IMG/VR virus record: IMGVR_UViG_3300042887_005053
Span: 62,001-126,000 of that record
Direction: 5' to 3' (one strand)
DNA: 64,000 bases
Positions 6,555 through 60,842 of the stretch are shown here, in pieces (position 1 is the first letter of the stretch; the number at the start of each line of letters is the position of its first letter). The position numbers and the translations under genes were made by a program. A model generated the notes under the pieces. It had not been told where the DNA came from. It ran no database searches and saw only the letters and a list, made by a program, of their open reading frames with translations.

Positions 6555-6619
6555 ATTGTGTATATATAAATAACTGATCTAATAATTTAATATATATATT
6601 AAAATTGTCTAAAAATTAA

Positions 6620-8035: not shown

Positions 8036-8037
8036 CT

Positions 8038-13177: not shown

Positions 13178-13186
13178 TTCTATTTG

Positions 13187-14896: not shown

Positions 14897-14898
14897 AA

Positions 14899-16818: not shown

Positions 16819-17540
16819 TATGACCTAAAAATACCTTTTTTGATCATTCTTGAAACTATTCTCGAAGAAGCCGTCTCAAGTGACTTTTTCGTAGTTATAC
16901 CAATAGTTGATTGATTGAACTTTACTTCTGTGTCATCTACTCCATCTAATATTGAAGCAGTTTTAATTGTACTAGCTTCACCTAATCCAGAACCAACTAT
17001 TACTTCTCCAGTTTCAGCATCAACAAATTTTACTTGTAGACCCAATCTAGTTGTCTGTGTAGTCTTCGATTCGCCATTTATCTTTACAACCTCATCCTCT
17101 GAGACCGAAAAGTCATAAACTTCAATATAAACAAAGTATTCAGCAAGTTTTATTTTACCTCTACCATCAACTTTATTTTCGGTGAATCCTTTATCAGATG
17201 CTTTGAATTGATTGACCATTCTTTCTTTTATTTCAAGTTTATCTTCAGTGAAAACAAATCTACCAGTATATTCTAAATACTCAAGTACTATGTTTGTAAC
17301 ACCAAGACCAACTCTTTTGTCTTTCAATTCTGGGTACATTGAATATAACTCTTCATTGATTCCGATTTTTAATAATTGAATTGGAATAACTATTGAATCA
17401 GTATAGTCTGATACCACATCTATAGATTGTTGTTTCTCAAAAGCAGCTTGGTATTGCTCAGTCTTAACACTACCGACAGGCTGAGCAATACTAGCTATTG
17501 AAAAAATCATATAAATTAAGAGTAAGCCTAATTTTTTCAT
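16818..17540 (-). CDS. CsgG/HfaB-family exported protein
   Basis: Signal peptide; L..TGRFVFTE, AEYFVYIEVYDF, LQVKFVDAETGEVI pattern typical of the CsgG fold. Confidence 0.7.
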   Translation of the reverse strand: MKKLGLLLIYMIFSIASIAQPVGSVKTEQYQAAFEKQQSIDVVSDYTDSIVIPIQLLKIGINEELYSMYPELKDKRVGLGVTNIVLEYLEYTGRFVFTEDKLEIKERMVNQFKASDKGFTENKVDGRGKIKLAEYFVYIEVYDFSVSEDEVVKINGESKTTQTTRLGLQVKFVDAETGEVIVGSGLGEASTIKTASILDGVDDTEVKFNQSTIGITTKKSLETASSRIVSRMIKKGIFRS

Positions 17541-17548
17541 TTTATTAA

Positions 17549-18100
17549 TTAATTTTGTTCTTCATCTGTTACATCACCACTGAAGTCTCTAGGTTCTTGA
17601 TAGTTAGGCTCTTCTTCTACATATGTGTCAGTAGTATTCTCTTCAACAAATGTATTTGTCTCTTGAGTTGGCTCATTCACTACTGTAGATTCAGAAGGTG
17701 TTGGTACATAAGATGCCTGAGATGTTGGTGGAGTTGGTGTCTTAGGTGAAGTGTATTCAGCAACATTTGATAGACTGTTACCGTCTTCTTCGTCAACTTT
17801 CTGAATCAACATTTTATCTCTGTCTTCTGAATTGAACCAATAATCAACAACTTTATTTAAGTTACCAACAAATGCACCTAATAATATAAGTAACATTTCT
17901 TTCCAGTTCTCTTGTATTTCCACACTGAAAAATACTGCTGAGTTTATACCAGCTATTATGAAGAAGAATAGAAATAATACAATTACCGTGATTCTCCATC
18001 TGTTAGCTTGCATTTGTTGTAACATATAGTAGAATCTATTTTTATCCTCTACTTTTACATATCCAGTTTCTCCGAATACTGTTCTTTTGAATTTTGACAT
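17549..18100 (-). CDS. Two-TM membrane protein with acidic P/T/E-rich tail
   Basis: Two hydrophobic helices (ITVIVLFLFFFIIAGI; MLLILLGAFVG). Confidence 0.65.
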   Translation of the reverse strand: MSKFKRTVFGETGYVKVEDKNRFYYMLQQMQANRWRITVIVLFLFFFIIAGINSAVFFSVEIQENWKEMLLILLGAFVGNLNKVVDYWFNSEDRDKMLIQKVDEEDGNSLSNVAEYTSPKTPTPPTSQASYVPTPSESTVVNEPTQETNTFVEENTTDTYVEEEPNYQEPRDFSGDVTDEEQN

Positions 18101-18117
18101 AGTTTTAATTTATTTTT

Positions 18118-18447
18118 TTACCAAGGAGAATCTTCGGTCTCACTTTTTTTCTCTTGCTTTTTCTCTACTGGCTTTTCAACAACAGTTTCTTTGATGATTG
18201 TTGTTGTACCACCGGATTTTTGTTGTTGTGTGTTCTCTTGATTTTGTTGAACATTTACAACTACTGGAGCAGGAGCTGGTTGTACTTGTTCAGTCTTAGT
18301 AGATTCTTCATCATCTGAGTGTCCACCGAATAGGGTTGTTGAGATCCATACTCCGCCTCCGGCGATTACTGTTGTTAAAGTACCAATGATAGTCTTTTTT
18401 AGACCTGACCAAGTACCATCGTTTGTCTCTTGTGTTTCTTCTGACAT
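18118..18447 (-). CDS. Single-TM membrane protein
   Basis: TIIGTLTTVIAGGGVWIS hydrophobic segment; Q/P-rich tail. Confidence 0.6.
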   Translation of the reverse strand: MSEETQETNDGTWSGLKKTIIGTLTTVIAGGGVWISTTLFGGHSDDEESTKTEQVQPAPAPVVVNVQQNQENTQQQKSGGTTTIIKETVVEKPVEKKQEKKSETEDSPW

Positions 18448-18456
18448 AATTTTAAT

Positions 18457-20382
18457 TTATTTTTTTATTATTTTACAAGTTTGTGATTGTGAATTAGCTT
18501 TCATATTTGCAAAGTACAAACCACTTGAAAAATTCGATATATTATCTTGATAGATATATTTACCAGCTGGCATATCCTGATTTATAATCATCTGATTAGT
18601 GACACCGTTCGGATCTGAAATATAAATCAAGACCGCTCCTGCATTTTTTACTTCAAACTCCAATGTTATCTCTCCAGTTGTTGGATTTGGATAAACTTGA
18701 AAAACTTGATCGTTCTGACCAGCAACTTTAGTGACAACCACAACACCATTTGAAGGGTTAATATTTAAATCTTTTGAAAATTCATTTCCTGAGAACTTTC
18801 TTGTTGTAAATAATGGTGAAAAATCCCAGTCACTTTGAGGTTGTTTAGCTAAAAATCTTAGTGTAAAGATTTGATCATCATTATTAACTAAATACTCTAG
18901 TTCAGCTGTTGGGTCATATCCACCCCATTCAATAGTATTATCTCTAGTATTTAAGAATGTCAACCACATCATAGTTTTCTCAGAATTCAAAATATCTTTG
19001 AACTCAAGAATTTCAGGATTATACATTACAGCAAGTTGTAAAGAAGATACTTGTTCACCATTAGTTAAAACTTTAACTGGTACTTCAACTAAGTTTCCTT
19101 CACTAACAGTGAGACTCGGCATATTTATTTCTATATCAGATGTTGGAAAATCGTACTGAACTCTTAAATCAATAACATTCTCTGTTGCTGATGGATATTC
19201 TGGGTGGTTTACTTCAACATTTATTGGTGTCAAACGAGCCATGTGGAAACCAGTACCATTTGCATCACCAGGAACTAAAACATAAAATTGAACTGAACTT
19301 GGTTGACCAGGTAAAATATTATACACAAAGTTTGTAACACCTGATATAGAAGATGTATAGTTATTTGTTGGATTTGTAGTAATAGTATTAAACTCTGTTT
19401 GTGTAAAAAACTTTATATCAGATGTAGAGTTAGGCCAAGTTGTAAATCTACCAGCAATTCTACCAAATACGCCATAAGCATCACTAATGGTTACATTGTT
19501 ACTTGAGTTCACATCAGCACTGTAAAAATCAAATCCAGATGGATTAGATGTGCCTAAAACCCATTGATTGATCAACTCAGCATCTGCAGTTGAAATTACA
19601 TTACCAACATTCATAGTGTCTCCTTGAACTGAAATCCTTACATCAAAGAATGTGGTATCGATTGATTCATTAAAAGAAAAATAACCATCTACATTTGTAG
19701 TGTATGTATCATGTATAGACCAAACGCTACCTGTTTTTGGTTTCTTTTCTAAAGCAACAGATAAATTCTTAGCACCAGATCCAGTAACATTTGTGAATGT
19801 GCCTGAAAAATTCAAAGTGTGTAAAAGAAAGTTACCACCATAATTATGTAAACTAAGAGGTAGATCGAAACCTGGTTGAGTCGCAACATAACTTGTGTAG
19901 TTATTAGTTGGTATTAAAGTCGTCCAACTAAGATTGTTTATACTTGTTATATTTGTAAATATAGAACTCTCAACATGCTCAAAGGTCAATTGGAATGTTT
20001 CTCCATTTGATAAACTAAAAGTGCTACTATTACCGGTATAAACTAAAGTAATTGTTATATAACCTTGAGCATTGTTGTCTACATATTGTAAATAAAGATT
20101 CGATGAAGACCCAACTAAATTTACACTACAAGATGTAAAAGCTGTGTTATCATAGAACACTCTAAACTGAGTACCTGTTGTTAAAGTAGTTGTAGTATTT
20201 TGTAGGGTTATCAAAGCAACTGTTTGGCCTTGATTAGTAGTACCAACTGTATAGTTAGTATCGATAATAGCCCAAATGCCATTACTTGGCGCAGGTGGTC
20301 CACTTTGTGAGTAAAGTGAAACTGGTAATGTAGACAACAATGTCAAGATTACCACCGAAAGGACGGATTTCAGTAGTTTCAT
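18457..20382 (-). CDS. Cohesin/dockerin-like protein with T9SS C-terminal sorting domain
   Basis: Signal peptide; two cohesin-like domains (QFRVFYDNT; VEVPVKV..SLQLAVMYNPEILEF); DVNSSNNVTISD; C-terminal VYPNP...GLYF...KIIKK. Confidence 0.8.
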   Translation of the reverse strand: MKLLKSVLSVVILTLLSTLPVSLYSQSGPPAPSNGIWAIIDTNYTVGTTNQGQTVALITLQNTTTTLTTGTQFRVFYDNTAFTSCSVNLVGSSSNLYLQYVDNNAQGYITITLVYTGNSSTFSLSNGETFQLTFEHVESSIFTNITSINNLSWTTLIPTNNYTSYVATQPGFDLPLSLHNYGGNFLLHTLNFSGTFTNVTGSGAKNLSVALEKKPKTGSVWSIHDTYTTNVDGYFSFNESIDTTFFDVRISVQGDTMNVGNVISTADAELINQWVLGTSNPSGFDFYSADVNSSNNVTISDAYGVFGRIAGRFTTWPNSTSDIKFFTQTEFNTITTNPTNNYTSSISGVTNFVYNILPGQPSSVQFYVLVPGDANGTGFHMARLTPINVEVNHPEYPSATENVIDLRVQYDFPTSDIEINMPSLTVSEGNLVEVPVKVLTNGEQVSSLQLAVMYNPEILEFKDILNSEKTMMWLTFLNTRDNTIEWGGYDPTAELEYLVNNDDQIFTLRFLAKQPQSDWDFSPLFTTRKFSGNEFSKDLNINPSNGVVVVTKVAGQNDQVFQVYPNPTTGEITLEFEVKNAGAVLIYISDPNGVTNQMIINQDMPAGKYIYQDNISNFSSGLYFANMKANSQSQTCKIIKK

Positions 20383-24982: not shown

Positions 24983-25741
24983 ATGTCTAATAAATCAGCT
25001 CAGTTAGATTTACTCAGCGAAGTCTGTAATTTAACAATAATCAATCAATTGGTTGAAACACATTGTGTTGAAGAATCTATAGGTCAAATAGAAGTATCAA
25101 AGACTATTAAAGACCATGATGCTGTGAGACACATAAATGAAACTATTGATTATAAACTTAAACAACACAGACTCATTATTAAAAAACACAAACATAATTC
25201 TGTAGTTATATCAGATCTTCCAATTAGTAACACAATATCGAGTAATAAATCAACTTGTGAGTGTATATCATCTGATATTAATCAAATATTCATAAATGAA
25301 CTAAAGTCCTTTAAGAACATACAAACTTTTGAATATGATTTTTTCAAACAAAGTTTTTTCAAAAGAATTTTCAATCCGAACACCGACGAAAAACTTACAC
25401 AACATATCATAGAATTAGGAAAAGATTGTTCTTGGATCATTGTGCCAACATTCTTATATGAAATAATTGTCGACTCAGAATGGTTTCAACCTTCAAACAT
25501 GAAAGAAGATTCTTTGATATTCAATGTTGGGAAATTAGATGAAATACAAGTCTATTTAAATCCAGATGAAGATGAGTCAGTAGTATATTTTGGAAACTAT
25601 GACTCAACTACAATTTTGATAAATAAGAATATTCAAGATGAAGATCTAAAAATTTGTTCCTTATTTAAGGAAGGAAGATCATTAATAGTTGAATATTTAT
25701 TTTTAGAAACAGGAAGAACGAAACTATTAAAGGTTAGTTAA
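24983..25741 (+). CDS. Hypothetical protein
   Basis: 252-aa ORF. Confidence 0.55.
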   Translation: MSNKSAQLDLLSEVCNLTIINQLVETHCVEESIGQIEVSKTIKDHDAVRHINETIDYKLKQHRLIIKKHKHNSVVISDLPISNTISSNKSTCECISSDINQIFINELKSFKNIQTFEYDFFKQSFFKRIFNPNTDEKLTQHIIELGKDCSWIIVPTFLYEIIVDSEWFQPSNMKEDSLIFNVGKLDEIQVYLNPDEDESVVYFGNYDSTTILINKNIQDEDLKICSLFKEGRSLIVEYLFLETGRTKLLKVS

Positions 25742-26620
25742 AAGATCATCTAAAAGAGAATTTCTTACTTCTTTAACACTATCAAAGTATCTAAAGTTAT
25801 ACTTTTGAGATCTACCTTTATCATTCATAATAACTACTTTAAGAACGCCATTTTCTAAACTTTTGGAAATTAAATTGTAATATGAATTTATTGTTAACTC
25901 ACCAAAGTTATTTGGCAATTCAATACACTTGATTTTTTCTCCTGGTTCAATTTCCAACATTTTAGATCTTAGTTCGTTTCCAATTCTTTGAATGAGATTG
26001 TCATAATTAATTTTAAGAAAATCAGACTTCGAATCGTTGAGTTGTTGAGTGATGAAAGAAACAATATCTTGTGTTTTTTGTATTTCAAATTTAATTGAGT
26101 TATCGGGTTCGGGTAGAGAGTTTATATACCAATTGCATATACGGTGGTATTCTTCGACTTCTATTTCGTTTTGAATGACAAAATTAGCAATAATCGGAGA
26201 GCTTAAAACCAAGTTATCACTATAGTGCCATCTACTACGCTTACGAGATCTATTAGTTAAAAGATCCCATCTTTTTGAATTTATTAGATTGCCAAAAGAT
26301 TTTACACTCTTATTCTTTAGCGATTTTTTAGCAAAATCATCTTTAGAGTTCTCAACAAGAACAGATTGAAAGTCTTTAACTTTAATTTTATCAGTGTAGT
26401 ATACCTGTTGATTTCTTTTCTGTGTATAAATACAAAATTCAATGAAGTCCATATAGATTGATAAACCGTAGTTTTGACACTCTCTTTTAAGTATATCAAA
26501 CTTCGAGTCTCTTATCTCTTGTTCTAAGCATAAAGAAAAATCCTTCAAAATTGGATAGAATTCTTTAATTTTCTCTATTTTTTCTAAATTACCTATAATT
26601 ATGTCTTTTGTGATCTTCAT
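25727..26620 (-). CDS. Hypothetical protein with C-terminal SH3-like module
   Basis: C-terminus GEKIKCI..LTINSYY..NDKG..Y resembles the 44884..45114 protein. Confidence 0.55.
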   Translation of the reverse strand: MKITKDIIIGNLEKIEKIKEFYPILKDFSLCLEQEIRDSKFDILKRECQNYGLSIYMDFIEFCIYTQKRNQQVYYTDKIKVKDFQSVLVENSKDDFAKKSLKNKSVKSFGNLINSKRWDLLTNRSRKRSRWHYSDNLVLSSPIIANFVIQNEIEVEEYHRICNWYINSLPEPDNSIKFEIQKTQDIVSFITQQLNDSKSDFLKINYDNLIQRIGNELRSKMLEIEPGEKIKCIELPNNFGELTINSYYNLISKSLENGVLKVVIMNDKGRSQKYNFRYFDSVKEVRNSLLDDLLTNL

Positions 26621-32472: not shown

Positions 32473-35454
32473 ATGGAGTCATATTGGGTATTAGGTATAA
32501 GAGTAGAAAATGAAGGTAAAAGTCCAACATTACACGATTATTATTCAAGGCCTATTGAGAAGTATAGCCAAACAGAAAACACATCTGGAACTAGTGAAGG
32601 GCCGCTAATTTCTATTTTACAAATAACTTTAGAATCATATTTTTCTCAACTAGCAGAGAAGTATAAAGCAAATGTAACAAATGAAGAATATGACTCTCAG
32701 GATAGTGAAGACATTTCTTATTTTCGAGCTGAACTTATATTTAATGCCAAAGAATCTAAACAATTACAGTCAAGTATTGTTAATGAAATCAAACTTAACT
32801 TTAAAAAGGTATTTGATGCTGCTTATTCTGCTCAACAAAAAGAAAATATTCCAGTAAAGCCAGAATATGTTCTTGTTGAGGATAATTCTAAACCATCAAA
32901 TAATGCCTTTTCCCAAGATGAAGGTGGCGGATATCAAATAACATATAGAATAAGAAAAGCTCAAGAGTTGCCAATAGAACTCATTCAAACTCAACCAGAT
33001 CCTGTTAATCAACCATCTTCTATAGAAAATAGTGGTCCAGATCAAAGTATAGTAAATCAACTATCACTTACACAACCTGGTCCTACTCAATCACCAGCTG
33101 AAATACAAAAACAACAACAAATTGCAAATATTGGCCCAAGTCAATCAAATGCTGATGGTCCGACTGCAACTATTCCACTTCAGGAAGAACAAATAAGTAG
33201 AGCTGAGAGAACTGGTCAAGACCCAAATACTTCTAACTCAAATACTGAGAAGCAAGAACCGCCAAAACCAAGTATAGTAAATATATCTCAACCAGCAATT
33301 AAGGCTAAAGAGATTAAATTTGATTTACCACCACAAGAAGATCAAAGAAAAGAAATAGCTCTTAGTTTTGGTAATATTCCATTTATATGGTATAATTCAT
33401 ATCAAATTCATCAAAGAGATATTGAATACTTTCAACTTTCCACTTCTGGTAATTTACCTAAAATTTCTATAAACTTTAGAGATAGTCTAAACTTAATGAA
33501 AGACAAAGGTTTTCCATTAGATGATACTAAAATATCTATTTTCATAAATCCAAGAAGTAAGCAATTAAAACCAATTCACATGGACTTTAAAATCGTGAAG
33601 TTTAATGTTATAGGTGATATGTATTCAATTACTGGTTTGGTAGATGCAAATGAGCTATATGTGAAAAAATTTAAGTCATTGTCGAAGATGACAAGCTTTG
33701 AAGCATTAAAACAACTAGCATCTGAAATAGGTCTTGGTTTTGCAAGTAATGTTGATAATACTAATGATAGAATGACTTGGATAAATTCCGGTGAAAGAAT
33801 AATAGAGTTTATTGAAAATATAGTTGATAATTCTTATAAATCAGATGAGACATATTTACTTTCATATATTGACTTTTATTATAACTTAACTTATGTTGAC
33901 TTAGAAAAAGAATTAACAAGAGATATTAAGAATGAGCTTGGTGTAGCTAATATAGGTATTGAGGAAGTTACAAAAATTAAAGATCAAGATAAGGTGGCAT
34001 CTCTATTATTGACTAATGATTTTTCTATGCAAAATAGTAACTCATTTTTCAGAGACTATAGAGTGATTAATAACTCAACAGCAATTTCTTTAGATGAAGG
34101 TTACTTAACTAAAGTGAAATTCTATGATCAAATTAAAAAGAACTTTTTAGTATTTGATGTCGATTCTATCACAAGTGAAGGTGATAAAAATATTATATTA
34201 AAAGGATCACCTCAGAGTGAGACTTTTTATAAGCAAAATGTAAACTTAGTTTACACGGGTAAGATTGATGATGATAATATGCATTTAAACTATCACTACT
34301 CTTATGTGCAAAATATTAGAAATATAGTAGAATTAGATAAGATATCACTTGAAATAGACATGCAGTCTCCAAATTATAATATTTATAGATTTCAAAAGAT
34401 TAATGTTTTAATTTCAAATCAAGCATCTACTCCTTCTCAACCACACATAAACAATAGATTGAGTGGTGAATGGTTTATCACAGATATTAAATTTAGATAT
34501 CAAAATGGTAAATATAGTCAAATCGTTAAACTAATTAAAAGAGAACTTGAATTATCACCAGAAGAATTAAAGTCAGAAGGACCTCAAGCTAAAAAGACTA
34601 AAGAGAATACTGGTTCACCATCCACTTCGAATGATAATACAAATCCAACTGATGCAACACCACCAGTTGAAACACCAGGTGATAATTTAGTTGGAGCTAC
34701 TTCATCGACGAATCAACCCGTTGATGATAGTAAATTTCCGTTGACTAAGGATATATTCAGATCTATCTATAAAGGAAAAGTAAATGATAAAGTCATTGAA
34801 CAGTATTATGAACCCATGAAAAACGCAATGATTAAATATCAAATTACAACAAAAGAAAGAGTTGCAGCTTTTCTATCACAAGTAAATGCTGAGACAAACT
34901 ATCTTATTTATAGTAGTGAGTTGGCTTCTGGTGAAGCCTATGAAGGAAGAAAAGATTTAGGTAATACAAACCCAGGTGATGGTAGAAAGTTTAAAGGAAG
35001 AGGACTTATTCAATTAACTGGTAGAAGTAATTATAAAAGCGCTGGGGAATACTTCAATAAAGATTTTATTAGTGATACTACAGTTGTAGCGGCAGATAAT
35101 GCAACTCATAAAAAAGGTGCAGCAACTCCTGAACAGATTGAGAACACAATACTCACATCTGTAAGATATTGGCTTTTAGGTTCGACTAAAGGAAATTTGA
35201 ATGATTATGCTGATAAGATGGACATAAGAAAGGGATTTGATTTTGGTGGCACTTCATTAGAAAATTTGCCTGAGTCTAACAAACAAGGAAAGCAGTATGG
35301 TAATGGTAAAAGTAAAAATTATGCAACTGCCTTTAATGCGAATGATGCTAACTTTGTCAATTTAACTATTATTTGTTTAGGAGTAAATGGTGGATATAAT
35401 GGTTACAGAGAAAGATTCAAGAATTGGTTGAGAATAAGAGAGCTACTGACTTAA
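32473..35454 (+). CDS. Baseplate hub-like protein fused to C-terminal GH19 lysozyme/chitinase domain
   Basis: Hub-like core ending LSGEWFITDIKF; GH19 motifs AAFLSQ..AET, YEGRKDLGN..GDG.KFKGRGLIQLTGRSNY, VNGGYNG. Confidence 0.8.
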   Translation: MESYWVLGIRVENEGKSPTLHDYYSRPIEKYSQTENTSGTSEGPLISILQITLESYFSQLAEKYKANVTNEEYDSQDSEDISYFRAELIFNAKESKQLQSSIVNEIKLNFKKVFDAAYSAQQKENIPVKPEYVLVEDNSKPSNNAFSQDEGGGYQITYRIRKAQELPIELIQTQPDPVNQPSSIENSGPDQSIVNQLSLTQPGPTQSPAEIQKQQQIANIGPSQSNADGPTATIPLQEEQISRAERTGQDPNTSNSNTEKQEPPKPSIVNISQPAIKAKEIKFDLPPQEDQRKEIALSFGNIPFIWYNSYQIHQRDIEYFQLSTSGNLPKISINFRDSLNLMKDKGFPLDDTKISIFINPRSKQLKPIHMDFKIVKFNVIGDMYSITGLVDANELYVKKFKSLSKMTSFEALKQLASEIGLGFASNVDNTNDRMTWINSGERIIEFIENIVDNSYKSDETYLLSYIDFYYNLTYVDLEKELTRDIKNELGVANIGIEEVTKIKDQDKVASLLLTNDFSMQNSNSFFRDYRVINNSTAISLDEGYLTKVKFYDQIKKNFLVFDVDSITSEGDKNIILKGSPQSETFYKQNVNLVYTGKIDDDNMHLNYHYSYVQNIRNIVELDKISLEIDMQSPNYNIYRFQKINVLISNQASTPSQPHINNRLSGEWFITDIKFRYQNGKYSQIVKLIKRELELSPEELKSEGPQAKKTKENTGSPSTSNDNTNPTDATPPVETPGDNLVGATSSTNQPVDDSKFPLTKDIFRSIYKGKVNDKVIEQYYEPMKNAMIKYQITTKERVAAFLSQVNAETNYLIYSSELASGEAYEGRKDLGNTNPGDGRKFKGRGLIQLTGRSNYKSAGEYFNKDFISDTTVVAADNATHKKGAATPEQIENTILTSVRYWLLGSTKGNLNDYADKMDIRKGFDFGGTSLENLPESNKQGKQYGNGKSKNYATAFNANDANFVNLTIICLGVNGGYNGYRERFKNWLRIRELLT

Positions 35455-35484
35455 TATATACACTATAAAAATTAAGTTACTAAA

Positions 35485-37227
35485 ATGCCATTTGGACTCT
35501 TTGATGATAAAGGACAAAAACTGTTTGGTCAAGATGATCCTCAAATTTCTGCATTAAAAAAATCCGCAGAACAAGGTCAAAAAAGAGGTACAAGTCAAAA
35601 TGTTATTGGTGGTGCCTTTCCTGTGCCATTAGTTAGTGCACTTAATTTAGAAGGTTCACTTGGTGATTGGTCAGAGACAACACCTGCTCATTTTTTACCT
35701 TATCCCGGAATTGAACTTAAAACTGGATTTACTGATCCTCAAAAAGTAGGAGAAGAATACGAATATGTATCATATGATGAAAATTCGAATCCAACAACAC
35801 CTAATGATAATTTAGACTCAAGAATTCAAACCTATGACTTTTTTAATGACTATTCAGCAAAGCAGTTCACCCATCTTCTTGATTATTTCATGGAGCAAAA
35901 TGGTACTCTTGGTGATAGAAGAAAGATAAATGTCGGTGAATCTGAAAATGGAGTAACTATTCCAGCAAATACAAAAGACATTTATTTAGGTTCATATATC
36001 AGAACATGGGATGATAATGAAGATCCAACAATGCACGGTTATGATATCTATATAAGATGGAATGAATCACCTCTTTTCAATGGTACTATTGATAGTTTTA
36101 TAACTGGATTTGGTAATATAGGTAATTCTGAAATTGCAAGTAGATTAGATGTTCTAAACAAATTTAAACAACAACTTGTTAGATTCATAAAAAATGATAG
36201 TCCATCCGCTTCAGGAAGACCAGATTTTCTTAATCAAAATGGTGTCAAAACCTATTACATGAGAAACCTTAGTGGGTTGAATTCTTTGGTTGAATCAAAT
36301 GATAGTAATAAAATAAAGTCATTTGTAGATTATGGAAATGAATTTATAACATTAGAATTTAACGAAGATGTGTCACAAAATATAGGTTACTTGGCATCTC
36401 TTTACAAAAGTCTTTCTTGGTCAAGGATTAATGGTAAACAAATTATACCTGAAAATTTATTAAGATTTGATGTTGATATTGAAATAACAGAAGTCAGAAA
36501 GTATAATAAGGTAATTTCAAATAAAGGGAAAGACGCAAAAGTTTATTCAGATCTGATCTCAAAGTACACTTACACACTATATGAGTGTCAATTCTTTTTT
36601 CAGAACCTACCACACGGTGATTCAATCGATATGAGTAATATCAAAGCGATTGACAAATATGATATTAAATTTAACTTTAAGTATTCAACCATGAAATTTG
36701 GTAGACTTTCATTTGAAGAAGTATTGGGAAACTATGGTAAAATGGAATATGTTAATGATAATAGATACATTAACACAAATACGATTACTTCTGGTTCAAC
36801 GAATAATTCAACTATTCAGAACAACACAATAACAAATGCTACACCTTATTATCCTCTGCCTTATTATAATGCTTATTCCTCGACTGGTGAACCAGATCCA
36901 ACACCAACACCAAGAACAGGACCATTACAAGTTGTAAAAGAGTCAGAGTCAAGAAAAAGTAAACTAAAGAAAGCTGCTCAAACACTCAAAAAAGATTTGA
37001 CAAATGCAGTCATAAATGAGGCAAACAGACAAATAATTGCTCAAGCTTCATTACTAAATAAAACTTTAGATAATATAAGGAATGCCATACCAGGTGCTGG
37101 TAGAATGAGTGCACCTACAAATGTTTATTCTGAGTATAACATACCACTAGCTAATGATGCAATAAATGCTGCGAGAAATTTTGTAGGTAGTTCTATAAAA
37201 AGTTTTTTCAGTGATCCAGGAGAATAA
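35485..37227 (+). CDS. Putative tail/baseplate structural protein
   Basis: Between hub and gp5-like genes; IIPENLLRFDVDIEITEVR; TAATATATA at 35452. Confidence 0.5.
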   Translation: MPFGLFDDKGQKLFGQDDPQISALKKSAEQGQKRGTSQNVIGGAFPVPLVSALNLEGSLGDWSETTPAHFLPYPGIELKTGFTDPQKVGEEYEYVSYDENSNPTTPNDNLDSRIQTYDFFNDYSAKQFTHLLDYFMEQNGTLGDRRKINVGESENGVTIPANTKDIYLGSYIRTWDDNEDPTMHGYDIYIRWNESPLFNGTIDSFITGFGNIGNSEIASRLDVLNKFKQQLVRFIKNDSPSASGRPDFLNQNGVKTYYMRNLSGLNSLVESNDSNKIKSFVDYGNEFITLEFNEDVSQNIGYLASLYKSLSWSRINGKQIIPENLLRFDVDIEITEVRKYNKVISNKGKDAKVYSDLISKYTYTLYECQFFFQNLPHGDSIDMSNIKAIDKYDIKFNFKYSTMKFGRLSFEEVLGNYGKMEYVNDNRYINTNTITSGSTNNSTIQNNTITNATPYYPLPYYNAYSSTGEPDPTPTPRTGPLQVVKESESRKSKLKKAAQTLKKDLTNAVINEANRQIIAQASLLNKTLDNIRNAIPGAGRMSAPTNVYSEYNIPLANDAINAARNFVGSSIKSFFSDPGE

Positions 37228-50735: not shown

Positions 50736-51973
50736 TTAAAACCCACCACTAAAAATGTCCATTATAACAGTAAGCCTTTTAGATATTTCCGGCAGTCCAA
50801 GAGGCGCAATAATCGAATTAATTGGACTCAATATACACTTTTCAAATTGAGTATCTAAGTCAATCTCAGGTGCCATCTCAATAGGATATGATCCTCTAAT
50901 GTAAGCAAAAGTATCATTCATTGATTTATCTTTGACATAGTAATACTTGATCTTAGTTCCAGATTTGATAAACTCATACTTAGATTGTAAAGATTTATTT
51001 CTATGTAGTAAGAAGTTATAATAAGCAGAAGCTTTAACAGCAAAGTGAGCTCCACTAACAAACTCTAATTTGTCCTTATCATTCAAACACTTATCATCAT
51101 AATTTGAACAAGAAGATTGCATACAGATCTCATCTATTCGATCTGGTACACACAAGTCAAACTCTTTTCTTAAATTCTTTACTAACTTTAGTAACTCCTT
51201 AATGTTAAATGTATCTGGGTGTTCAAACAAATATTTAACAATACCAACAATCTTATCTCTTGCAAAAAGAGGAGTAGATGATCTCACAAGTTCAACTCCC
51301 TTAGGATACATATAAGTCAATCTATCATAAGGAATTCCATCTTCATAAACAATATGTTGAATATACTTCTTTTTAGCAATGTTTATAATTGATTCAGAAA
51401 TACGCTCTAACTCAAAATCTTGTTTGTTTTCAACACCATACTCAGCAGCATGTTCATCTAAACATTTTTTGAAATATCCAGCATATCTATTCTTATCTAA
51501 TGCATGAATAAACTCTAATTCTGTTTTGTATGCATGTTTCCATTCACAATGATCCATCGCTGGCTTAAATGATACAAAAAGTGAATCAGTATCAGCATAT
51601 ATAGAAACTTGCTCATCTCTTTCAATTGGAGTAACATTTTTGAGATTCATTTTTTCATGCAACTCAGTATCTAAATGCCATTGATTATACCAATAGTCTT
51701 CATTTACTTTATGCATTGTTTGCGTCAGGTTTCTACCTTCAGCTGTTATGGTTCCAGCAACATGGTTATTAAATAAAATAAAATAGGGTGTTGCGAATGC
51801 ACCGTAACTACCATTTAACACTAACTTCAAAGCTTTTTTTCACCCCCTCTGAAAATAATCAGAGGGGGTTATCTAGCGAGCTGAAGAGCGTTGAAATAAT
51901 CAACTTCCTTCTTCAGCTCGTTTGCTTGTTTTTTTAGTGACTCGATCTTTTCTAATCTTTCTTCTCTAGTCAT
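50736..51973 (-). CDS. Family-B DNA polymerase C-terminal subunit (gp43B-like), in two segments: 51973-51875 and 51830-50736
   Basis: Joined product reads ...YFNALQLA|LKLVLNGSYG (motif B), then IT.EGR, YADTDS, KKKY, KGVE; no exonuclease domain or motif A. Confidence 0.85.
51831..51877 (-). other. Candidate programmed translational bypass element (44-nt gap)
   Basis: GCT(51877-75) AGA TAA, 11-bp perfect stem (51869-59/51852-42), G-A7, GCT(51833-31). Confidence 0.7.
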
Positions 51974-57078: not shown

Positions 57079-57570
57079 TTATCTTCCTAAATAGTTCATT
57101 AATTCTATAATATTTTTAATTGTATATCCTAAACTTTCTAAGTTTTTGGATGAGCTTCTTAAAAATTCAATATAGTTTTCTATTAATTGTATATTTCTGT
57201 CATTTTCAGAAATGTGTGCATCAATTAGTAGTCCTTTTTCACCAAGATTGGTTTTAAGTCCAAATCCGGTTGCATAGAAAACAAACTTATCTTGTTTTAG
57301 TTTTTTAATTTTTACTTCTTCTTTTGATCTCTTATTTAAGAAGAAAGAAATTTGTTCATTTATGACTTGTCGATAGCTAAGTGCTAAAGATTGAACTTCC
57401 ATAATTTTTTGAGAGTTTTCTAAAGTAAAGTTATTTTTAATCACATCAAATAATGGCGTAATATTTTTACTCCATTCTTCTCTCTTTTGATTAAAAAAGT
57501 CTTCTAGTTTATCATTTGTTTCTTTTGCTTTTTCGATTCTGATTCTTTCTTCGTCTGTATAGAGATTCAT
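57079..57570 (-). CDS. UvsY-like recombination mediator
   Basis: All-helical protein, ..FY.., C-terminal IEFL...LGYTIKNIIEL resembling the UvsY end. Confidence 0.55.
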   Translation of the reverse strand: MNLYTDEERIRIEKAKETNDKLEDFFNQKREEWSKNITPLFDVIKNNFTLENSQKIMEVQSLALSYRQVINEQISFFLNKRSKEEVKIKKLKQDKFVFYATGFGLKTNLGEKGLLIDAHISENDRNIQLIENYIEFLRSSSKNLESLGYTIKNIIELMNYLGR

Positions 57571-57586
57571 ATTAAAAATTAAATAT

Positions 57587-57847
57587 TTGTATTTATATAT
57601 ACCAGAAATAATCTTGTTTAAGAGAATGGATATTAAATTTGAAATCGAAAAGGCTCAAAAAATTGAAATTCTCAATGATAATGATTTACAAAGTGTAAAA
57701 GAATTATACTTTTCTAAGGATGGTATTTTACCAAAAATTTATAATTTTGCTACTACGAAAAAAGGAGAAGAGTCTTCACTTATTTTATCGGATTTAAATA
57801 AAATCAGAAGTATAATTACCAAAAAAATAAGTGATTATACTAGCTAA
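57587..57847 (+). CDS. Hypothetical protein
   Basis: ORF track; true start may be the internal MDIKFE. Confidence 0.4.
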   Translation: MYLYIPEIILFKRMDIKFEIEKAQKIEILNDNDLQSVKELYFSKDGILPKIYNFATTKKGEESSLILSDLNKIRSIITKKISDYTS

Positions 57848-59000
57848 TAACACTAACTACTTCAGGATAATACTCACAAGCTTCTGGATTTTTGCCTTCA
57901 TAGTTAATAACTGATAATGCATATCTCATGGCATTTAATCTACCAATTCTTTTATCGTTTGAATTGATTATTGTCCAAGGAGCTTTTTTAGTTGATGTTT
58001 TTTCAAACATCTGATTTTTGTACATTGTAATAATATTCCACTTTCCGATTACTTTTTCATCGTTTGGTGAAAACTTCCAGAATTTAATAGGTGATGTTTT
58101 TCTTAATTCAAATCTTTGAATTTGTTTTTCTTGTGTTATAGAAAACCAAAACTTAATTAAAGTAATTCCTTGATTAACTAATCCAGCTTCCCACTTATTA
58201 ACATTTTCCATGAAATCTCTATACTGTTCTTCAGTACAATATCCCATAGCTGGTTCAACTACAGCTCTGTTATACCAAGAACGATCAAAGAAAACAATTT
58301 CACCAGGTTTAGGTAATTCTTTTTCGTATCTCGCAAACCAATTATTCTTTTCTTCTTCAGTTGGCATTCCAAGAGCAACAATTCTGAATATTCTTGGATT
58401 CAAAACTTCTGTGAATCTTTTTATAGTAGAACCTTTACCAGCTGAATCTCTACCTTCAAAAACTATTGCAATTCTTTGATTTGTATTTTTAACCCATTCT
58501 TGTAGTTTAACTAGTTCAATTTGAATTTGGTATTTTTCATCTTCGTATTGTCTTCTTGTTAGAATAGATTTTTCACCTTCCATTCTGTCAATGTGTTCTT
58601 CTTCTGGTGATAAACCTTCAGCTTTTTCAATGTATTCATCAACTCTATCGATTAATGACTCATAGTAGATTTCGAATTCTGCTGAAATCATTTTTTTGGT
58701 CCTTTTTCCTTTTAAATCGAGTAGTTGGTGTATTTTTCTTAAAAAAGTTTCTGTATTAAAAAAAGTAACTATTTCTTTAGTGAATTCTTTTTCTAGTTCA
58801 CTTAAAATCATTTCAATATCGATATTGTCAAAATCTTTATAGATTACTTCGCCTTTTTCTGTAGAAATATTTTCTAATATAAAATCACGATAAGTGTTCA
58901 ATCTCATCACAAATTGATTTTCGATATCTTGAAGTTCTTCTACTGGTAGTTCGAATTCTAATTCTTCGTTTAGAAATGTATTAAATGGTTTGAGTTTCAT
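57840..59000 (-). CDS. ppk2: Polyphosphate kinase 2 with N-terminal extension
   Basis: FEGRDSAGKGSTIKR, FDRSWYNRA, IKFWFSI, WKFSP.D, APW...S.DK. Confidence 0.93.
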   Translation of the reverse strand: MKLKPFNTFLNEELEFELPVEELQDIENQFVMRLNTYRDFILENISTEKGEVIYKDFDNIDIEMILSELEKEFTKEIVTFFNTETFLRKIHQLLDLKGKRTKKMISAEFEIYYESLIDRVDEYIEKAEGLSPEEEHIDRMEGEKSILTRRQYEDEKYQIQIELVKLQEWVKNTNQRIAIVFEGRDSAGKGSTIKRFTEVLNPRIFRIVALGMPTEEEKNNWFARYEKELPKPGEIVFFDRSWYNRAVVEPAMGYCTEEQYRDFMENVNKWEAGLVNQGITLIKFWFSITQEKQIQRFELRKTSPIKFWKFSPNDEKVIGKWNIITMYKNQMFEKTSTKKAPWTIINSNDKRIGRLNAMRYALSVINYEGKNPEACEYYPEVVSVIS

Positions 59001-59011
59001 ATAATTATATA

Positions 59012-59914
59012 TTAAATTTTTGAGTCAAATATATAAACATCAAAAGTAGTATTACCTTTGACTTTTTTAATCTTTTTAAGTACATCGCCTGATATTGAAT
59101 CCAAAACTTTAAATACTCCAATATTCGTTCCTTTTTCATCTAATATCTTAACTGTATTTCCTGGTTGACCGAGTGCACCAAGCATTGCTACATATTTGTT
59201 TCCATAAATACTTTTTAAGAAAGAAACTCTAATATTTGCAACATCCTTAATATTATTTACATAAGGATTGTCTAATGGATTATTTAAATCTAAGATTGTA
59301 TCAGTTGCTTTAGCTTTAACTGTGACGAATTTTCTGGTTTCTTCTCCTAAGGTTATATCTTCTTTATTTTGAATTTCTTGTGATTTAATTAAAGCTTGTT
59401 GATTTTTTCTTATTTCGTTAAAATCAGCTCTTGCTAAAATTCCACCTCTCATTCCTTTGTCATTCATATTATATCCTGATGGTGGAAGTCTATAGAAAGA
59501 ACCTGTAAATGTAACTGATAAAAGTCTATCGAATCTAAATAGCCTCCAAATTTTATTAATATGTCTATTTCCTGATACAGACCATCCATTTAAGTGGTAT
59601 CCTCTTATTAAAAATTTCCCTTTAGATGATTTACCGATAACCATTGGATAAATCACTCTTTCTGATCCCATAAATCTTTTATCTTTTTCCCCTTTATAAT
59701 TGATAAGAAAAACCATTCCATATTTAATAGCCTTCATAATGAGTTCTTGTGTGGGTTTTAGTGGCTCATTAACTGGTATATCCGCTATATTTTTAATATT
59801 TTTTAATTGAAATCTAGGAACATAGGAATTATCCTCTTTTAGGTTATAATTCTCTTTAATTACAAACTCAATTGGCTTGGTGTTAAAATAATTTTTTACT
59901 TGACTTATGTTCAT
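59012..59914 (-). CDS. WYL-domain-like protein
   Basis: INY...ERVIYP...LIRGY...WRLFRFDRL. Confidence 0.6.
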   Translation of the reverse strand: MNISQVKNYFNTKPIEFVIKENYNLKEDNSYVPRFQLKNIKNIADIPVNEPLKPTQELIMKAIKYGMVFLINYKGEKDKRFMGSERVIYPMVIGKSSKGKFLIRGYHLNGWSVSGNRHINKIWRLFRFDRLLSVTFTGSFYRLPPSGYNMNDKGMRGGILARADFNEIRKNQQALIKSQEIQNKEDITLGEETRKFVTVKAKATDTILDLNNPLDNPYVNNIKDVANIRVSFLKSIYGNKYVAMLGALGQPGNTVKILDEKGTNIGVFKVLDSISGDVLKKIKKVKGNTTFDVYIFDSKI

Positions 59915-60842
59915 TATATTTAAATATCTTTTTAGATTTTATAAGTGAAAGTAAATTATTGATTTTCACATTTTTATTATCATGTATTACGTGAAGAATA
60001 TTTTTATATATTTTGTTATCTTTTTCACTTTTTATTTCTTTATCCATTAGTATCAAATATTGTCCAAAATTATTTTCAATTTTTGATTGAAAATAATCAA
60101 TTTTTGGATGAGATTTATATCTCCATAGATATCCTGCAGTTTGAAACCTTTCTCCCATACAAACTTGATTTATTTTAGATAGACTAATTTTATTATACAT
60201 TGATGCTTCTGTTAAGGATTTATATTCTGTTTGATTATTTAAATAATCAATTCTTGTAACAGGATACTGTTTTTTGTTTCTTATTCTTTCTTCAAATTTA
60301 TCTTCTTTATATAAAAATATAAATTTATTTTTCCATATTTTTATATCACCATTGCATATTTGACTAATAGTCTGTGGATGAGTATTATTCATCTCACCAG
60401 CCTCCTTTACTGATTTGTATTCTTCTATAAAATTACCATCTATATCATATTTAACCACTGGTCTATTTAACTTTTCTATGTAATCATTTTTGTGTTTATA
60501 TCCAATAAAAGTTTCACCACCCTTGGTATAATTTGTTAAAGGACCTGTTTTATCCACAATTCTACCTATTTCTCTTATTAGTTTTATTTCTATTTCTATA
60601 GCCTCTTCATTTGTGAGGTTATTTTGGATTTTTCTTATAATTGGTTCTATTCCTGCCTTTTGTATTTTTAATATCTTATTATTCTTTAGTGGATTCCATT
60701 CTTTAATTTTAAGATGTCTGAGATATCTTGATTTTTTGCCTTTACCAATATAAAATGGTTCATATTCTAATTTGTATCCATCATAGTTATATTGTCCTGG
60801 TTTTCTTGGATCCATATAGACATAGATATAATATTCATTCAT
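59883..60842 (-). CDS. GIY-YIG homing endonuclease with NUMOD1 repeats
   Basis: YYIYVY.DP...FYIGKG..R..H, E..LI...G...LTN; two YKS..EA...I.Q.C.G modules. Confidence 0.8.
   Translation of the reverse strand: MNEYYIYVYMDPRKPGQYNYDGYKLEYEPFYIGKGKKSRYLRHLKIKEWNPLKNNKILKIQKAGIEPIIRKIQNNLTNEEAIEIEIKLIREIGRIVDKTGPLTNYTKGGETFIGYKHKNDYIEKLNRPVVKYDIDGNFIEEYKSVKEAGEMNNTHPQTISQICNGDIKIWKNKFIFLYKEDKFEERIRNKKQYPVTRIDYLNNQTEYKSLTEASMYNKISLSKINQVCMGERFQTAGYLWRYKSHPKIDYFQSKIENNFGQYLILMDKEIKSEKDNKIYKNILHVIHDNKNVKINNLLSLIKSKKIFKYNEHKSSKKLF

What the first reader, a model, noticed from the sequence alone, without database searches (positions are those of the whole stretch)
57840..59000. Polyphosphate kinase 2 carrying a capsid-targeting-like leader and late promoter
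Seen: an intact PPK2 core preceded by about 140 extra residues starting MKLKPFNTFLNEE, with TAATATATA 5 nt upstream. Known: PPK2 makes NTPs from polyphosphate. Inference: a virion-delivered enzyme that taps host polyP immediately on infection, possibly countering nucleotide-depletion defences.
Basis: inference. Interest (0 to 1): 0.65.

Follow-up and report, generated by a model that had tools for sequence, protein, structure and literature searches.

The report
Tagged polyphosphate kinase in a huge phage
A giant phage that probably infects Bacteroidota encodes an intact polyphosphate-driven NTP-regenerating enzyme (PPK2) fused to a phage-only N-terminal domain and a short N-terminal tag that matches the phage T4 capsid-targeting signal, so it may be loaded into the capsid, but this is not shown.

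Summary
Window 57840-59000 (-) is a 386-aa ORF with an intact class I PPK2 core (residues 148-386). About 123-143 extra N-terminal residues precede it, and TAATATATA ends 5 nt before the ATG.

The extension is not one leader. It has three parts:
- a conserved 14-residue peptide that AF2 models only at low confidence (F6-x-x-F9-L10-N-E12);
- an acidic helical domain of about 110 aa, found only in huge-phage contigs, which in some relatives is a stand-alone ORF at the same locus;
- a linker with an invariant EGExS.

The peptide has the pattern Ar-x-x-Ar-[IL]-x-E of the T4 capsid-targeting sequence MKTYQEFIAE. The same pattern forms 11-12 tandem repeats in this phage's own head-maturation protease. 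It starts within the first 14 residues of 7 of 218 ORFs (0.6 expected).

T[AT]ATATATA is a real phage-specific promoter-like motif. It is about 5-fold over-represented and sits 4-5 or 19-25 nt from start codons. It is conserved before PPK2 in 21 relatives and also precedes the portal, protease and sheath genes. It also precedes topoisomerase and UvsY genes, so "late" is not established.

Capsid packaging is plausible (about 45%) but unproven. The counter-defence role is speculation. The gene context is nucleotide and DNA metabolism.

The parts
57840..59000 (-). Whole ORF, 386 aa (P0001), including its stop codon: tag + N-domain + linker + class I PPK2
59006..59014 (-). TAATATATA, a phage-specific promoter-like motif 5 nt upstream of the ATG (leaderless-type spacing). 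It overlaps the TAA stop of the upstream gene.
58959..59000 (-). Residues 1-14, the conserved N-terminal tag MKLKPFNTFLNEEL. Its pattern is Ar-x-x-Ar-[IL]-x-E-E-L. E12 is invariant, N11 is kept in 42 of 45 sequences and I/L10 in 43 of 45. AF2 pLDDT is below 50.
58620..58943 (-). Residues 20-127, an acidic helical N-domain (helices 20-43, 62-73, 75-80, 83-96 and 101-127, plus a beta-hairpin at 45-54). No known fold or family matches it. It was found only in huge-phage contigs.
58560..58619 (-). Residues 128-147, a low-confidence linker with nearly invariant D138 and E141-G142 and invariant E143 and S145
57843..58559 (-). Residues 148-386, the PPK2 catalytic core (class I, polyP:NDP phosphotransferase type)
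59012..59914 (-). Conserved 300-aa ORF of unknown function. It lies directly upstream of the PPK2 or N-domain gene in this phage and in L002, L003, L034 and L035, and nearby on the opposite strand in L013.
57079..57570 (-). UvsY-like recombination mediator, the conserved downstream neighbour. It has its own GTATATATA motif 23 nt upstream.

Best explanation
Shown:
- The gene encodes a catalytically intact class I PPK2 (polyphosphate + NDP -> NTP).
- It lies in a 204-kb fragment of a huge phage. CheckV estimates the fragment at 35% complete, so the genome is roughly 0.5-0.6 Mb. The phage is related to the 634-735 kb Mahaphage genomes, which were predicted to infect Bacteroidetes.
- The enzyme is fused to a phage-specific N-terminal module: a 14-aa conserved peptide modelled at low confidence, a 110-aa acidic helical domain, and a linker.
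- The gene has its own copy of the phage's T[AT]ATATATA promoter-like motif. The spacing would give a leaderless or nearly leaderless mRNA.

Inferred, step 1: during infection the enzyme uses host polyphosphate to recharge NDPs to NTPs. This would support replication and transcription of a very large genome. The gene sits beside PurB, carbamoyl-phosphate synthase, an aminotransferase, DNA polymerase and UvsY genes.

Inferred, step 2 (my favoured reading of the tag): the N-terminal peptide works like the T4 capsid-targeting sequence. It copies one repeat unit (Y-S-E-Y-[LI]-A-E-N-L) of the scaffold-like C-terminal half of the phage's head-maturation protease. It would therefore co-assemble with the prohead core and be cut after Glu12. 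PPK2 would then be packaged and ejected with the DNA, along with other tagged enzymes.
For: Enzyme identity.

Phage identity and host:
- The contig is a virus record, 35% complete.
- Relatives are LR756502.1 and the other huge-phage records. The published host prediction for them is Bacteroidetes (PMC7162821).
- TAnnTTTG boxes precede other genes, and a relative encodes a peptidase with a type IX secretion (T9SS) sorting domain.

Architecture:
- The extension is conserved across the more than 100 listed full-length homologues of 366-400 aa.
- In the AF2 model, residues 1-14 are low confidence, 20-127 are folded, and 130-142 form a low-confidence linker.

Promoter-like motif:
- It is about 5-fold over-represented, and its distance to the ATG is bimodal.
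- It is present 4 nt or 19-29 nt upstream of PPK2 in all 21 relatives examined.
- The same motif precedes the portal, sheath and head-protease genes and several giant ORFs that look structural.

Tag:
- The T4 CTS is MKTYQEFIAE (PMC8442874). Its targeting determinants are residues 4 and 7, and its processing determinants are residues 8 and 10 (PMC9026906). This is the same register as F6, F9, L10 and E12 here.
- Ar..Ar[ILV].E starts within the first 14 residues in 7 of 218 ORFs, against 0.6 in shuffles.
- The bodies of the tagged proteins are unrelated to one another.
- The head-maturation protease (phrog_207, E 4.8e-28) is encoded next to the portal gene. It carries 11-12 tandem 14-aa repeats with the same Ar-x-x-Ar-[IL]-x-E-N-L pattern, conserved in LR756502.1.
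- Tagged genes are enriched for the leaderless-type promoter spacing: 11 of 25 against 20 of 193.
- Divergent PPK2 fusions keep a tag at the extreme N-terminus, even where 150 residues are inserted behind it (P0196).
- Giant-phage ejection proteins with long propeptides cleaved after Glu are documented (PMC5694885).
Against: - No proteome, transcript or cleavage data exist.
- The gene context is nucleotide metabolism, replication and recombination, not head assembly.
- The promoter-like motif also precedes a topoisomerase-like ORF (recognised by eye only) and a UvsY-like gene, so it is not diagnostic of late timing.
- Other tag bearers are typical cytoplasmic enzymes: an Rnl1-like RNA ligase and a CCA-adding enzyme. 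Both have host-type TAnnTTTG boxes upstream.
- Some family members lack the aromatic part of the tag (P0041 begins MINEELEF, L023 begins MNYKKILEE).
- The N-domain persists as a stand-alone ORF where the PPK2 core is absent, so it has a function of its own.
- The tag patterns were defined after looking at the data, so their P values are optimistic.
- The 14-aa repeats could simply be a coiled coil.
Confidence: 0.45

Rival explanations
1. PPK2 is an ordinary intracellular auxiliary metabolic enzyme and is never packaged. The N-domain and tag serve an intracellular purpose, for example oligomerisation, regulation, or docking onto the phage's replication/recombination or nucleotide-synthesis machinery.
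For: - The locus order 300-aa ORF, then N-domain(+PPK2), then UvsY is conserved.
- The neighbours are PurB, an aminotransferase, a DNA polymerase B fragment and carbamoyl-phosphate synthase.
- The N-domain exists without PPK2 at the same locus.
- Viral ppk2 genes are reported as auxiliary metabolic genes in metagenome surveys (PMC13188868).
- The promoter-like motif is shared with topoisomerase and UvsY genes.
Against: - This reading does not explain why the same short N-terminal pattern sits on many unrelated proteins.
- It does not explain why that pattern equals the repeat unit of the head protease and the T4 CTS.
- No partner was identified. The N-domain has no detectable homologue or fold match.
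Confidence: 0.38
2. The shared N-terminal motif results from translation-start constraints. These would be leaderless mRNAs in a host without Shine-Dalgarno use, favouring AU-rich first codons that encode K, Y, L, F, N and I. On this view it is not a protein signal.
For: - Tagged genes are enriched for the arrangement with 4-8 nt between motif and ATG.
- The residues of MKYLKxFNE are mostly encoded by A/U-only codons, and the genome is 30% GC.
Against: - Synonymous codons vary at nearly every position of the eight MKYLK starts: AAA/AAG, TAT/TAC, TTA/TTG/CTA and TTT/TTC.
- MKYLK occurs 8 times against 0.157 expected from position-specific composition.
- In the PPK2 family, E12, N11 and I/L10 are as conserved as catalytic residues.
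- The same pattern recurs internally in the protease repeats.
Confidence: 0.1
3. The resemblance to a targeting sequence is coincidental. The first residues merely begin the N-domain fold, and the upstream motif acts for another purpose, such as an RNA-processing or termination signal of the upstream gene.
For: - The minimal motif [FYW][IL].E is only 2.2-fold enriched in the first 20 residues.
- TAATATATA overlaps the upstream gene's stop codon.
- AF2's low confidence for residues 1-14 is not proof of disorder.
Against: - The motif keeps two sharp distance classes relative to ATGs genome-wide. It is conserved before PPK2 in 21 diverged relatives, including those where the upstream gene differs.
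- The seven-residue pattern is 11-fold enriched at N-termini.
Confidence: 0.07

Closest known systems
Class I single-domain PPK2 (Francisella tularensis PPK2, PDB 5ll0/4yeg; Sinorhizobium SMc02148, 3czq; NCBIfam TIGR03707)
   Same: The catalytic core aligns end to end (query 144-375 with chain 21-253, E 3e-73). The P-loop, Walker B and lid segments are identical or near-identical. The score is above the TIGR03707 equivalog cut-off.
   Different: The protein carries about 123 more N-terminal residues than FtPPK2. These comprise a tag, a 110-aa acidic helical domain and a linker. A pattern scan of 185,579 bacterial and archaeal species genomes did not find this module. Only PPK2 fusions or stand-alone ORFs on phage-like contigs carry it.
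Phage T4 capsid-targeting sequence (CTS, MKTYQEFIAE) of internal proteins IPI-III
   Same: Both are extreme N-terminal peptides of 10-14 aa. Both have aromatic residues at P7 and P4, I/L at P3 and Glu at P1. Both are shared by otherwise unrelated proteins. In both cases the phage encodes a gp21-related head protease and a cleavable core or scaffold (protease).
   Different: Here the cargo includes enzymes of 190-460 aa, and the tag is offset by 2 residues. A second, commoner variant (MKYLKxFNE) lacks the I/L. No packaging or cleavage has been shown. The genes are scattered rather than grouped in one internal-protein locus.
Ejection proteins of giant phages (SPN3US, phiKZ) with long N-terminal propeptides cleaved at (A/S/G)-X-E
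   Same: Both cases involve a large phage, a Glu-specific prohead protease family, propeptides of about 125 residues, and enzymes (the virion RNA polymerase) carried in the head (PMC5694885).
   Different: The putative sites here are [IL]-N-E12 and E-G-E143, not A/S/G-X-E. The 110-aa N-domain also exists as an independent ORF, which argues against its being only a propeptide.
Virus-encoded ppk2 reported as an auxiliary metabolic gene in metagenome surveys
   Same: A phage-borne PPK2 presumed to act on host polyphosphate (PMC13188868, PMC9636769).
   Different: In the passages I read, those reports treat ppk2 as a polyP-accumulation marker, and I saw no mention of an N-terminal module, tag or dedicated phage promoter. 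Other phage records with PPK2 in the 50,697-record collection carry the core only.

Membership tests
PPK2, class I (polyP:NDP phosphotransferase) | PPK2 domain present over its full length | tested here: met
   PF03976 covers residues 148-370, profile positions 3-226 of 229, E 3e-78
PPK2, class I (polyP:NDP phosphotransferase) | Scores as the class I equivalog rather than the two-domain AMP phosphotransferase or class III families | tested here: met
   TIGR03707 scores 315.5 bits, above its 301.8 cut-off. TIGR03708, TIGR03709 and NF042973 all score far below their cut-offs.
PPK2, class I (polyP:NDP phosphotransferase) | Walker A (GxDxxGKG), Walker B (DRS) and lid-loop Arg/Lys residues intact | tested here: met
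   The residue-by-residue alignment to 5ll0 shows them conserved. They are invariant in 45 family members.
PPK2, class I (polyP:NDP phosphotransferase) | PolyP-dependent phosphorylation of ADP/GDP | not testable with these tools
   This needs an enzyme assay.
T4-type capsid-targeting sequence / prohead propeptide | Lies in the first 10-19 residues, with aromatic residues at P7 and P4, I/L at P3 and Glu at P1 | tested here: met
   Here these positions are F6, F9, L10 and E12. The family consensus is FxxFINEE. The T4 determinants come from PMC9026906 and the sequence from PMC8442874.
T4-type capsid-targeting sequence / prohead propeptide | The same tag is shared by unrelated cargo proteins of the same phage | tested here: met
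   Seven ORFs carry the strict pattern at the N-terminus, against 0.6 expected. Twenty-five of 218 ORFs carry either tag variant. Their bodies are unrelated by BLASTP.
T4-type capsid-targeting sequence / prohead propeptide | The phage encodes a gp21/phiKZ-type, Glu-specific head-maturation protease and a core that the tag can bind | tested here: inconclusive
   A protease is present next to the portal gene (phrog_207, E 4.8e-28). PF03420 scores only 22.7 bits, below its cut-off of 27. The C-terminal repeats YSEY[LI]AENL match the tag. Specificity and binding were not shown; the complex prediction gave no verdict.
T4-type capsid-targeting sequence / prohead propeptide | The protein is incorporated into proheads and the tag is removed | not testable with these tools
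   This needs virion proteomics or a reporter-fusion assay.
T4-type capsid-targeting sequence / prohead propeptide | Expression coincides with head assembly | tested here: inconclusive
   The promoter-like motif is the same as before the portal, protease and sheath genes. It also precedes topoisomerase and UvsY genes. No transcript data were available.
T4 late promoter (TATAAATA) | TATAAATA box at about -10, enriched upstream of late genes | tested here: not met
   The motif here is T[AT]ATATATA. TATAAATA occurs 25+31 times against about 24 per strand expected.
Phage-specific promoter T[AT]ATATATA of this clade (defined here) | Over-represented, strand-coherent, at a fixed distance from start codons, and conserved in orthologous positions | tested here: met
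   It occurs 61 times against about 13 expected. Distances cluster at 4-5 nt and 19-25 nt. It precedes 76 of 218 ORFs. It is present before PPK2 in 21 relatives. Transcription starts were not mapped.

The most novel reading that the evidence does not exclude
Huge Bacteroidota phages of the Mahaphage type use a T4-like capsid-targeting tag. The tag is a mimic of the repeat unit of their protease-scaffold protein. With it they load a diverse set of enzymes into the capsid, among them a polyphosphate-powered NTP generator, an RNA ligase and a CCA-adding enzyme, and inject them with the DNA as a ready-made starter and repair kit. About one ORF in nine of this contig would then be candidate cargo.
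Probability: 0.3. Interest if true: 0.85.

Novelty: new variant of a known kind. Interest (0 to 1): 0.6.

Why it matters
PPK2 in phages has so far been only a line in lists of auxiliary metabolic genes. This case differs in three ways: the enzyme has a conserved phage-only N-terminal module, it has its own phage promoter, and it carries a tag with the same determinants as the one experimentally defined capsid-targeting signal (T4).

If the tag works as in T4, there are two consequences. First, it would give a sequence rule for predicting which proteins uncultured huge phages carry in their capsids, which cannot currently be read from genomes. Second, it would show that an energy and nucleotide-regenerating enzyme is delivered at the moment of infection.

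Even if the tag does not target the capsid, three findings remain useful for annotating these genomes:
- a modular N-terminal tag on about 11% of ORFs;
- the two promoter classes (host-type TAnnTTTG and phage-type T[AT]ATATATA);
- the evidence for leaderless-type spacing.

Tried and rejected
- PHROG 'internal head protein' (phrog_2667) matched residues 35-121 only at E 0.094. This is not significant and does not cover the tag, so I discarded it.
- Foldseek searches of the N-domain model against PDB and BFVD gave nothing better than E 0.3 and TM about 0.3. No fold was assigned.
- A pattern scan of 185,579 bacterial and archaeal genomes for the N-domain gave no relative. This is a limited-sensitivity negative.
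- The word search restricted to residues 1-143 found only PPK2 fusions. The later exhaustive profile search corrected this by finding stand-alone N-domain ORFs.
- Complex prediction of the protease repeat region with PPK2 residues 1-146 gave no verdict (score 0.00, controls not run). It is not evidence either way.
There is no expression or 5'-end evidence.
- The sigma-70 promoter scan found 21 sites against 28 in shuffles, and the terminator scan found none. Neither is informative.
- The T4 late box TATAAATA is not enriched.
- A TATATTTG box (host type) lies 25 nt upstream of the ATG. It is explained by the conserved codons Y-I-F-D at the end of the upstream gene, so I did not count it as a promoter.
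- The atlas look-up of the 300-aa neighbour returned viral hypothetical proteins only.
- An hmmsearch of the N-domain profile against this contig's ORFs found only PPK2 itself.
Full report
**1. The observation**

The ORF at window 57840..59000 lies on the minus strand and encodes 386 aa beginning MKLKPFNTFLNEE.
- Pfam PPK2 covers residues 148-370 with E 3e-78.
- The class I equivalog TIGR03707 scores 315.5 bits, above its cut-off of 301.8. The AMP-phosphotransferase and class III models fall far below theirs.
- The closest solved structure is Francisella PPK2 (5ll0/4yeg). Query residues 144-375 align with chain residues 21-253, with conserved P-loop, Walker B and lid segments.
- Solved bacterial single-domain PPK2s have 20-54 residues before the core; this protein has 143.
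- Read on the coding strand, the sequence before the start is TTTAATATATA-ATTAT-ATG. TAATATATA occupies 59014-59006, and its first three bases are the stop codon of the upstream ORF.

**2. What genome this is**

The window is bases 62001-126000 of a 204,336-bp IMG/VR virus contig that CheckV estimates at 35% complete. GC content is about 30%.

The only phage records sharing the full-length protein are four uncultured genomes of 634-735 kb. [quoted passage not shown]

Two observations fit that host. Many genes are preceded by TAnnTTTG; from my own knowledge this is the Bacteroidota sigma-A -7 box. A relative encodes a peptidase with a Por_Secre_tail sorting domain.

The contig carries several morphogenesis genes:
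- a portal gene (phrog_213);
- a tail sheath gene (phrog_34521);
- a baseplate hub gene;
- directly after the portal, a head-maturation protease. Its orthologue in LR756502.1 matches phrog_207 at E 4.8e-28 and has a weak, sub-threshold PF03420 hit. The two proteases are 74% identical.

**3. The upstream motif**

TAATATATA occurs 39+22 times against about 6.5 expected per strand. The T4 late box TATAAATA occurs at the expected rate.

The distance from the end of the motif to the next ATG is sharply bimodal: 4-5 nt, or 19-25 nt. With T[AT]ATATATA as the definition, 76 of 218 ORFs have the motif. Of these, 31 are in the short class and 39 in the long class. Both classes share a T-rich 5' flank.

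The long class includes:
- the portal and sheath genes;
- ORFs of 2207, 1898 and 935 aa;
- an ORF whose N-terminus looks like a type II topoisomerase/GyrB (recognised by eye only);
- the UvsY-like gene.

The head protease gene also has the motif, 20 nt upstream here and 29 nt upstream in LR756502.1.

In 21 relatives the PPK2 gene is always preceded by T[AT]ATATATA, either 4 nt or 19-29 nt before the ATG. Their N-domains are 36-47% identical to this one.

I conclude that this is a genuine phage-specific promoter-like element with a copy dedicated to PPK2. It is the type used by morphogenesis genes. Because it is also used by DNA-metabolism genes, it cannot be called 'late' from sequence alone. 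The 4-5 nt spacing implies leaderless or nearly leaderless mRNA; this is inference.

A second class of genes carries host-type TAnnTTTG boxes. These genes encode UvdE, a DUF2201 protein and proteins of unknown function, and are probably early.

**4. The N-terminal extension has three parts**

The extension is conserved across the more than 100 listed full-length homologues of 366-400 aa, which are 60-76% identical overall.

The AF2 model built with the family alignment has a mean pLDDT of 81.5 and shows:
- residues 1-14 with pLDDT below 50 and no secondary structure;
- a folded helical domain with one beta-hairpin at residues 20-127 (pLDDT about 80-90);
- a low-confidence linker at 130-142;
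- the PPK2 core.

The extension is acidic (pI 4.5) and the core is basic (pI about 9).

The N-domain matches nothing in Pfam, PHROGs, PDB or BFVD. A pattern scan of 185,579 prokaryotic species genomes found nothing.

An exhaustive profile search of 1.84 billion representatives found 79 proteins. They include divergent PPK2 fusions and many stand-alone proteins of 116-129 aa consisting of tag plus N-domain.

In one such contig the order is: end of the 300-aa ORF, then a 116-aa N-domain ORF, then UvsY. The PPK2 core is missing there while the N-domain ORF is intact. In another contig, the N-domain-only ORF again directly follows the 300-aa gene.

The N-domain is therefore an autonomous module with its own, unknown function. 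It is not a 140-residue leader.

**5. The tag**

Within the PPK2 family the first residues are as constrained as the active site (45 sequences):
- position 6 is F or Y in 35;
- position 9 is F in 25;
- position 10 is I or L in 43;
- N11 is kept in 42;
- E12 is kept in all 45;
- position 14 is L, I or V in 37.

This gives the pattern Ar-x-x-Ar-[IL]-x-E-E-L.

The T4 capsid-targeting sequence is MKTYQEFIAE (PMC8442874). Its targeting determinants are residues 4 and 7, and its processing determinants are residues 8 and 10 (PMC9026906). That is the same pattern in the same register relative to the Glu.

Evidence across the contig:
- Ar..Ar[ILV].E occurs 21 times in 218 ORFs (11.4 in shuffles). Seven occurrences start within the first 14 residues, against 0.6 expected.
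- Four of the seven bearers have family matches: PPK2, an Rnl1-like RNA ligase, a CCA-adding enzyme and an AAA-type ATPase.
- A commoner variant, MK[YHI][LI]Kx[FY][NE][ES], starts 18 ORFs, against 2 of 1014 windows at internal Met residues.
- The exact string MKYLK starts 8 ORFs, against 0.157 expected.
- Tagged proteins are unrelated beyond the tag.
- Synonymous codons vary within the tag, so the conservation is at the peptide level.
- Tagged genes are enriched for the short promoter spacing: 11 of 25 against 20 of 193.
- Some PPK2 orthologues begin MKYLKSINEEL.

The tag patterns were written after seeing the data, so the P values are optimistic. The MKYLK count and the N-terminal enrichment are robust.

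**6. Link to the head protease**

The C-terminal half of the head-maturation protease consists of 11-12 tandem 14-residue repeats, NISYSEY[LI]AENLDK. Each contains Ar-x-x-Ar-[IL]-x-E-N-L, and they are conserved in the 642-kb relative.

This is the same nine-residue pattern as the PPK2 tag (FNTFLNEEL; family consensus FxxFINEEL).

In T4 the scaffold core is cut after Glu at many [LI]-x-E sites, and CTS peptides bind that core. The [LI]-x-E cleavage rule is from my own knowledge; the papers I read state cleavage after Glu and CTS affinity for the core (PMC9026906, PMC3012670, PMC5694885).

The simplest reading is that the tag imitates one scaffold repeat, co-assembles with the core and is removed by the protease. 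This is inference. The repeats could also be only a coiled coil, and a complex prediction gave no verdict.

**7. Function and weighing**

The enzyme assignment is secure from sequence. The physiological role is inferred from enzyme class and context: recharging NDPs from host polyphosphate during replication of a genome of about 0.5 Mb. Neighbouring genes are PurB, an aminotransferase, a DNA polymerase B fragment, UvsY and carbamoyl-phosphate synthase. A relative has NAMPT and NUDIX genes nearby.

For capsid delivery:
- the tag's identity with the T4 determinants;
- its modular distribution across unrelated proteins;
- the matching protease repeats;
- a promoter-like motif shared with morphogenesis genes;
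- precedent for enzyme cargo and long propeptides in giant phages.

Against capsid delivery:
- the metabolic gene context;
- tags on enzymes that have host-type upstream boxes;
- loss of the aromatic positions in some orthologues;
- the autonomous N-domain;
- no expression or proteome data.

I put capsid delivery at about 45%, a purely intracellular role at about 38%, and the remainder on translation-related or coincidental explanations. A role against nucleotide-depletion defences is compatible with the chemistry, but nothing tested here bears on it.

**8. Novelty**

Viral ppk2 is already listed among auxiliary metabolic genes (PMC13188868, PMC9636769). Four things are new as far as the libraries searched show:
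- the fusion architecture;
- the phage-only N-domain;
- the dedicated phage promoter-like motif;
- the CTS-like tag system shared by about 11% of the contig's ORFs.

No paper held both 'polyphosphate kinase' and 'huge phages'.

Noticed in passing
window 5392-8358 (four ORFs); G000:C1:154861-161425 (seven ORFs); G000:C1:191191-193515: There are clusters of adjacent small ORFs whose products share only an N-terminal MKYLKxFNE-like tag and are otherwise unrelated. This resembles the hypervariable internal-protein loci of T4-like phages. Twenty-five of 218 ORFs carry one of the two tag variants.
   Followed up: partly
G000:C1:202752-204275 (L033:1501-3084; outside the window, open at the contig end): The head-maturation protease lies directly after the portal gene. 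Its C-terminal half is 11-12 tandem 14-aa repeats NISYSEY[LI]AENLDK, followed by an acidic EEEGDKY repeat tail. This looks like a protease-scaffold fusion that could be cut into 14-mers.
   Followed up: partly
whole contig; e.g. window 25727-26620 (-) and G000:C1:27583, 30373, 45586: There are two upstream motif classes: a host-type TAnnTTTG box (consensus cTTATATTTGTAa) before about 18-24 genes of mostly unknown function, and the phage-type tTTAATATATA before 76 genes. Both occur either 4-5 nt or about 15-29 nt from the ATG, suggesting widespread leaderless transcripts.
   Followed up: partly
L035:119-469 and L034:4001-4369 (relatives): In some relatives the PPK2 core is absent and a 116-122 aa ORF (tag + N-domain) occupies the same place after the 300-aa gene. 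In L035 this ORF is followed by UvsY. In L034 the contig ends 39 nt after the ORF, so what follows is unknown. At least 15 such stand-alone clusters exist.
   Followed up: partly
window 59012-59914 (-): A conserved 300-aa ORF with no Pfam, PHROG or atlas assignment always lies next to the PPK2 or N-domain gene. It may be a functional partner. Its C-terminus is conserved as ...YIFD(K/S)K(I/L)*.
   Followed up: partly
window 59883-60842 (-): A GIY-YIG/NUMOD homing endonuclease has its own TAATATATA 5 nt upstream. Its 3' end overlaps the start of the 300-aa ORF by 32 nt. It is absent at this position in L002 and L003, so it is probably a recent insertion.
   Followed up: no
window 286-4097 (-): The phage encodes carbamoyl-phosphate synthase large (914 aa) and small (366 aa) subunits, which is an unusual pyrimidine/arginine precursor pathway for a phage.
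   Followed up: no
window 50736-51830 (-): A 364-aa ORF matches only the C-terminal part (profile positions 157-452) of DNA polymerase family B. The polymerase gene may be split or interrupted. A similar 404-aa fragment is called in L003.
   Followed up: no
L005:9731-11065 (-) and L006:15166-16341 (+) (G000 9728-11065 and 35166-36344): An Rnl1-like RNA ligase and a CCA-adding tRNA nucleotidyltransferase each carry an extra 17-35 residues at the N-terminus that hold the same Ar-x-x-Ar-L-x-E tag as PPK2.
   Followed up: partly
L002:14940-18392 (816-kb relative): NUDIX, aminotransferase and NAMPT/NAPRTase genes lie 4-7 kb downstream of PPK2. This is a possible NAD+ salvage module next to the polyP enzyme.
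   Followed up: no
window 12294-20382 (-): A run of ORFs has lipoprotein or signal-peptide-like N-termini (e.g. MKKIILSILVILITNIFYAQDC). Relative L003 encodes an M43 peptidase with a T9SS Por_Secre_tail domain. Both fit a Bacteroidota host and phage-encoded surface or secreted proteins.
   Followed up: no
window 57587-57847 (+): An 86-aa ORF converges on PPK2 and overlaps its 3' end by 8 nt. It has TATATATA 24 nt upstream and no family match. Whether it is a real gene is unknown.
   Followed up: no
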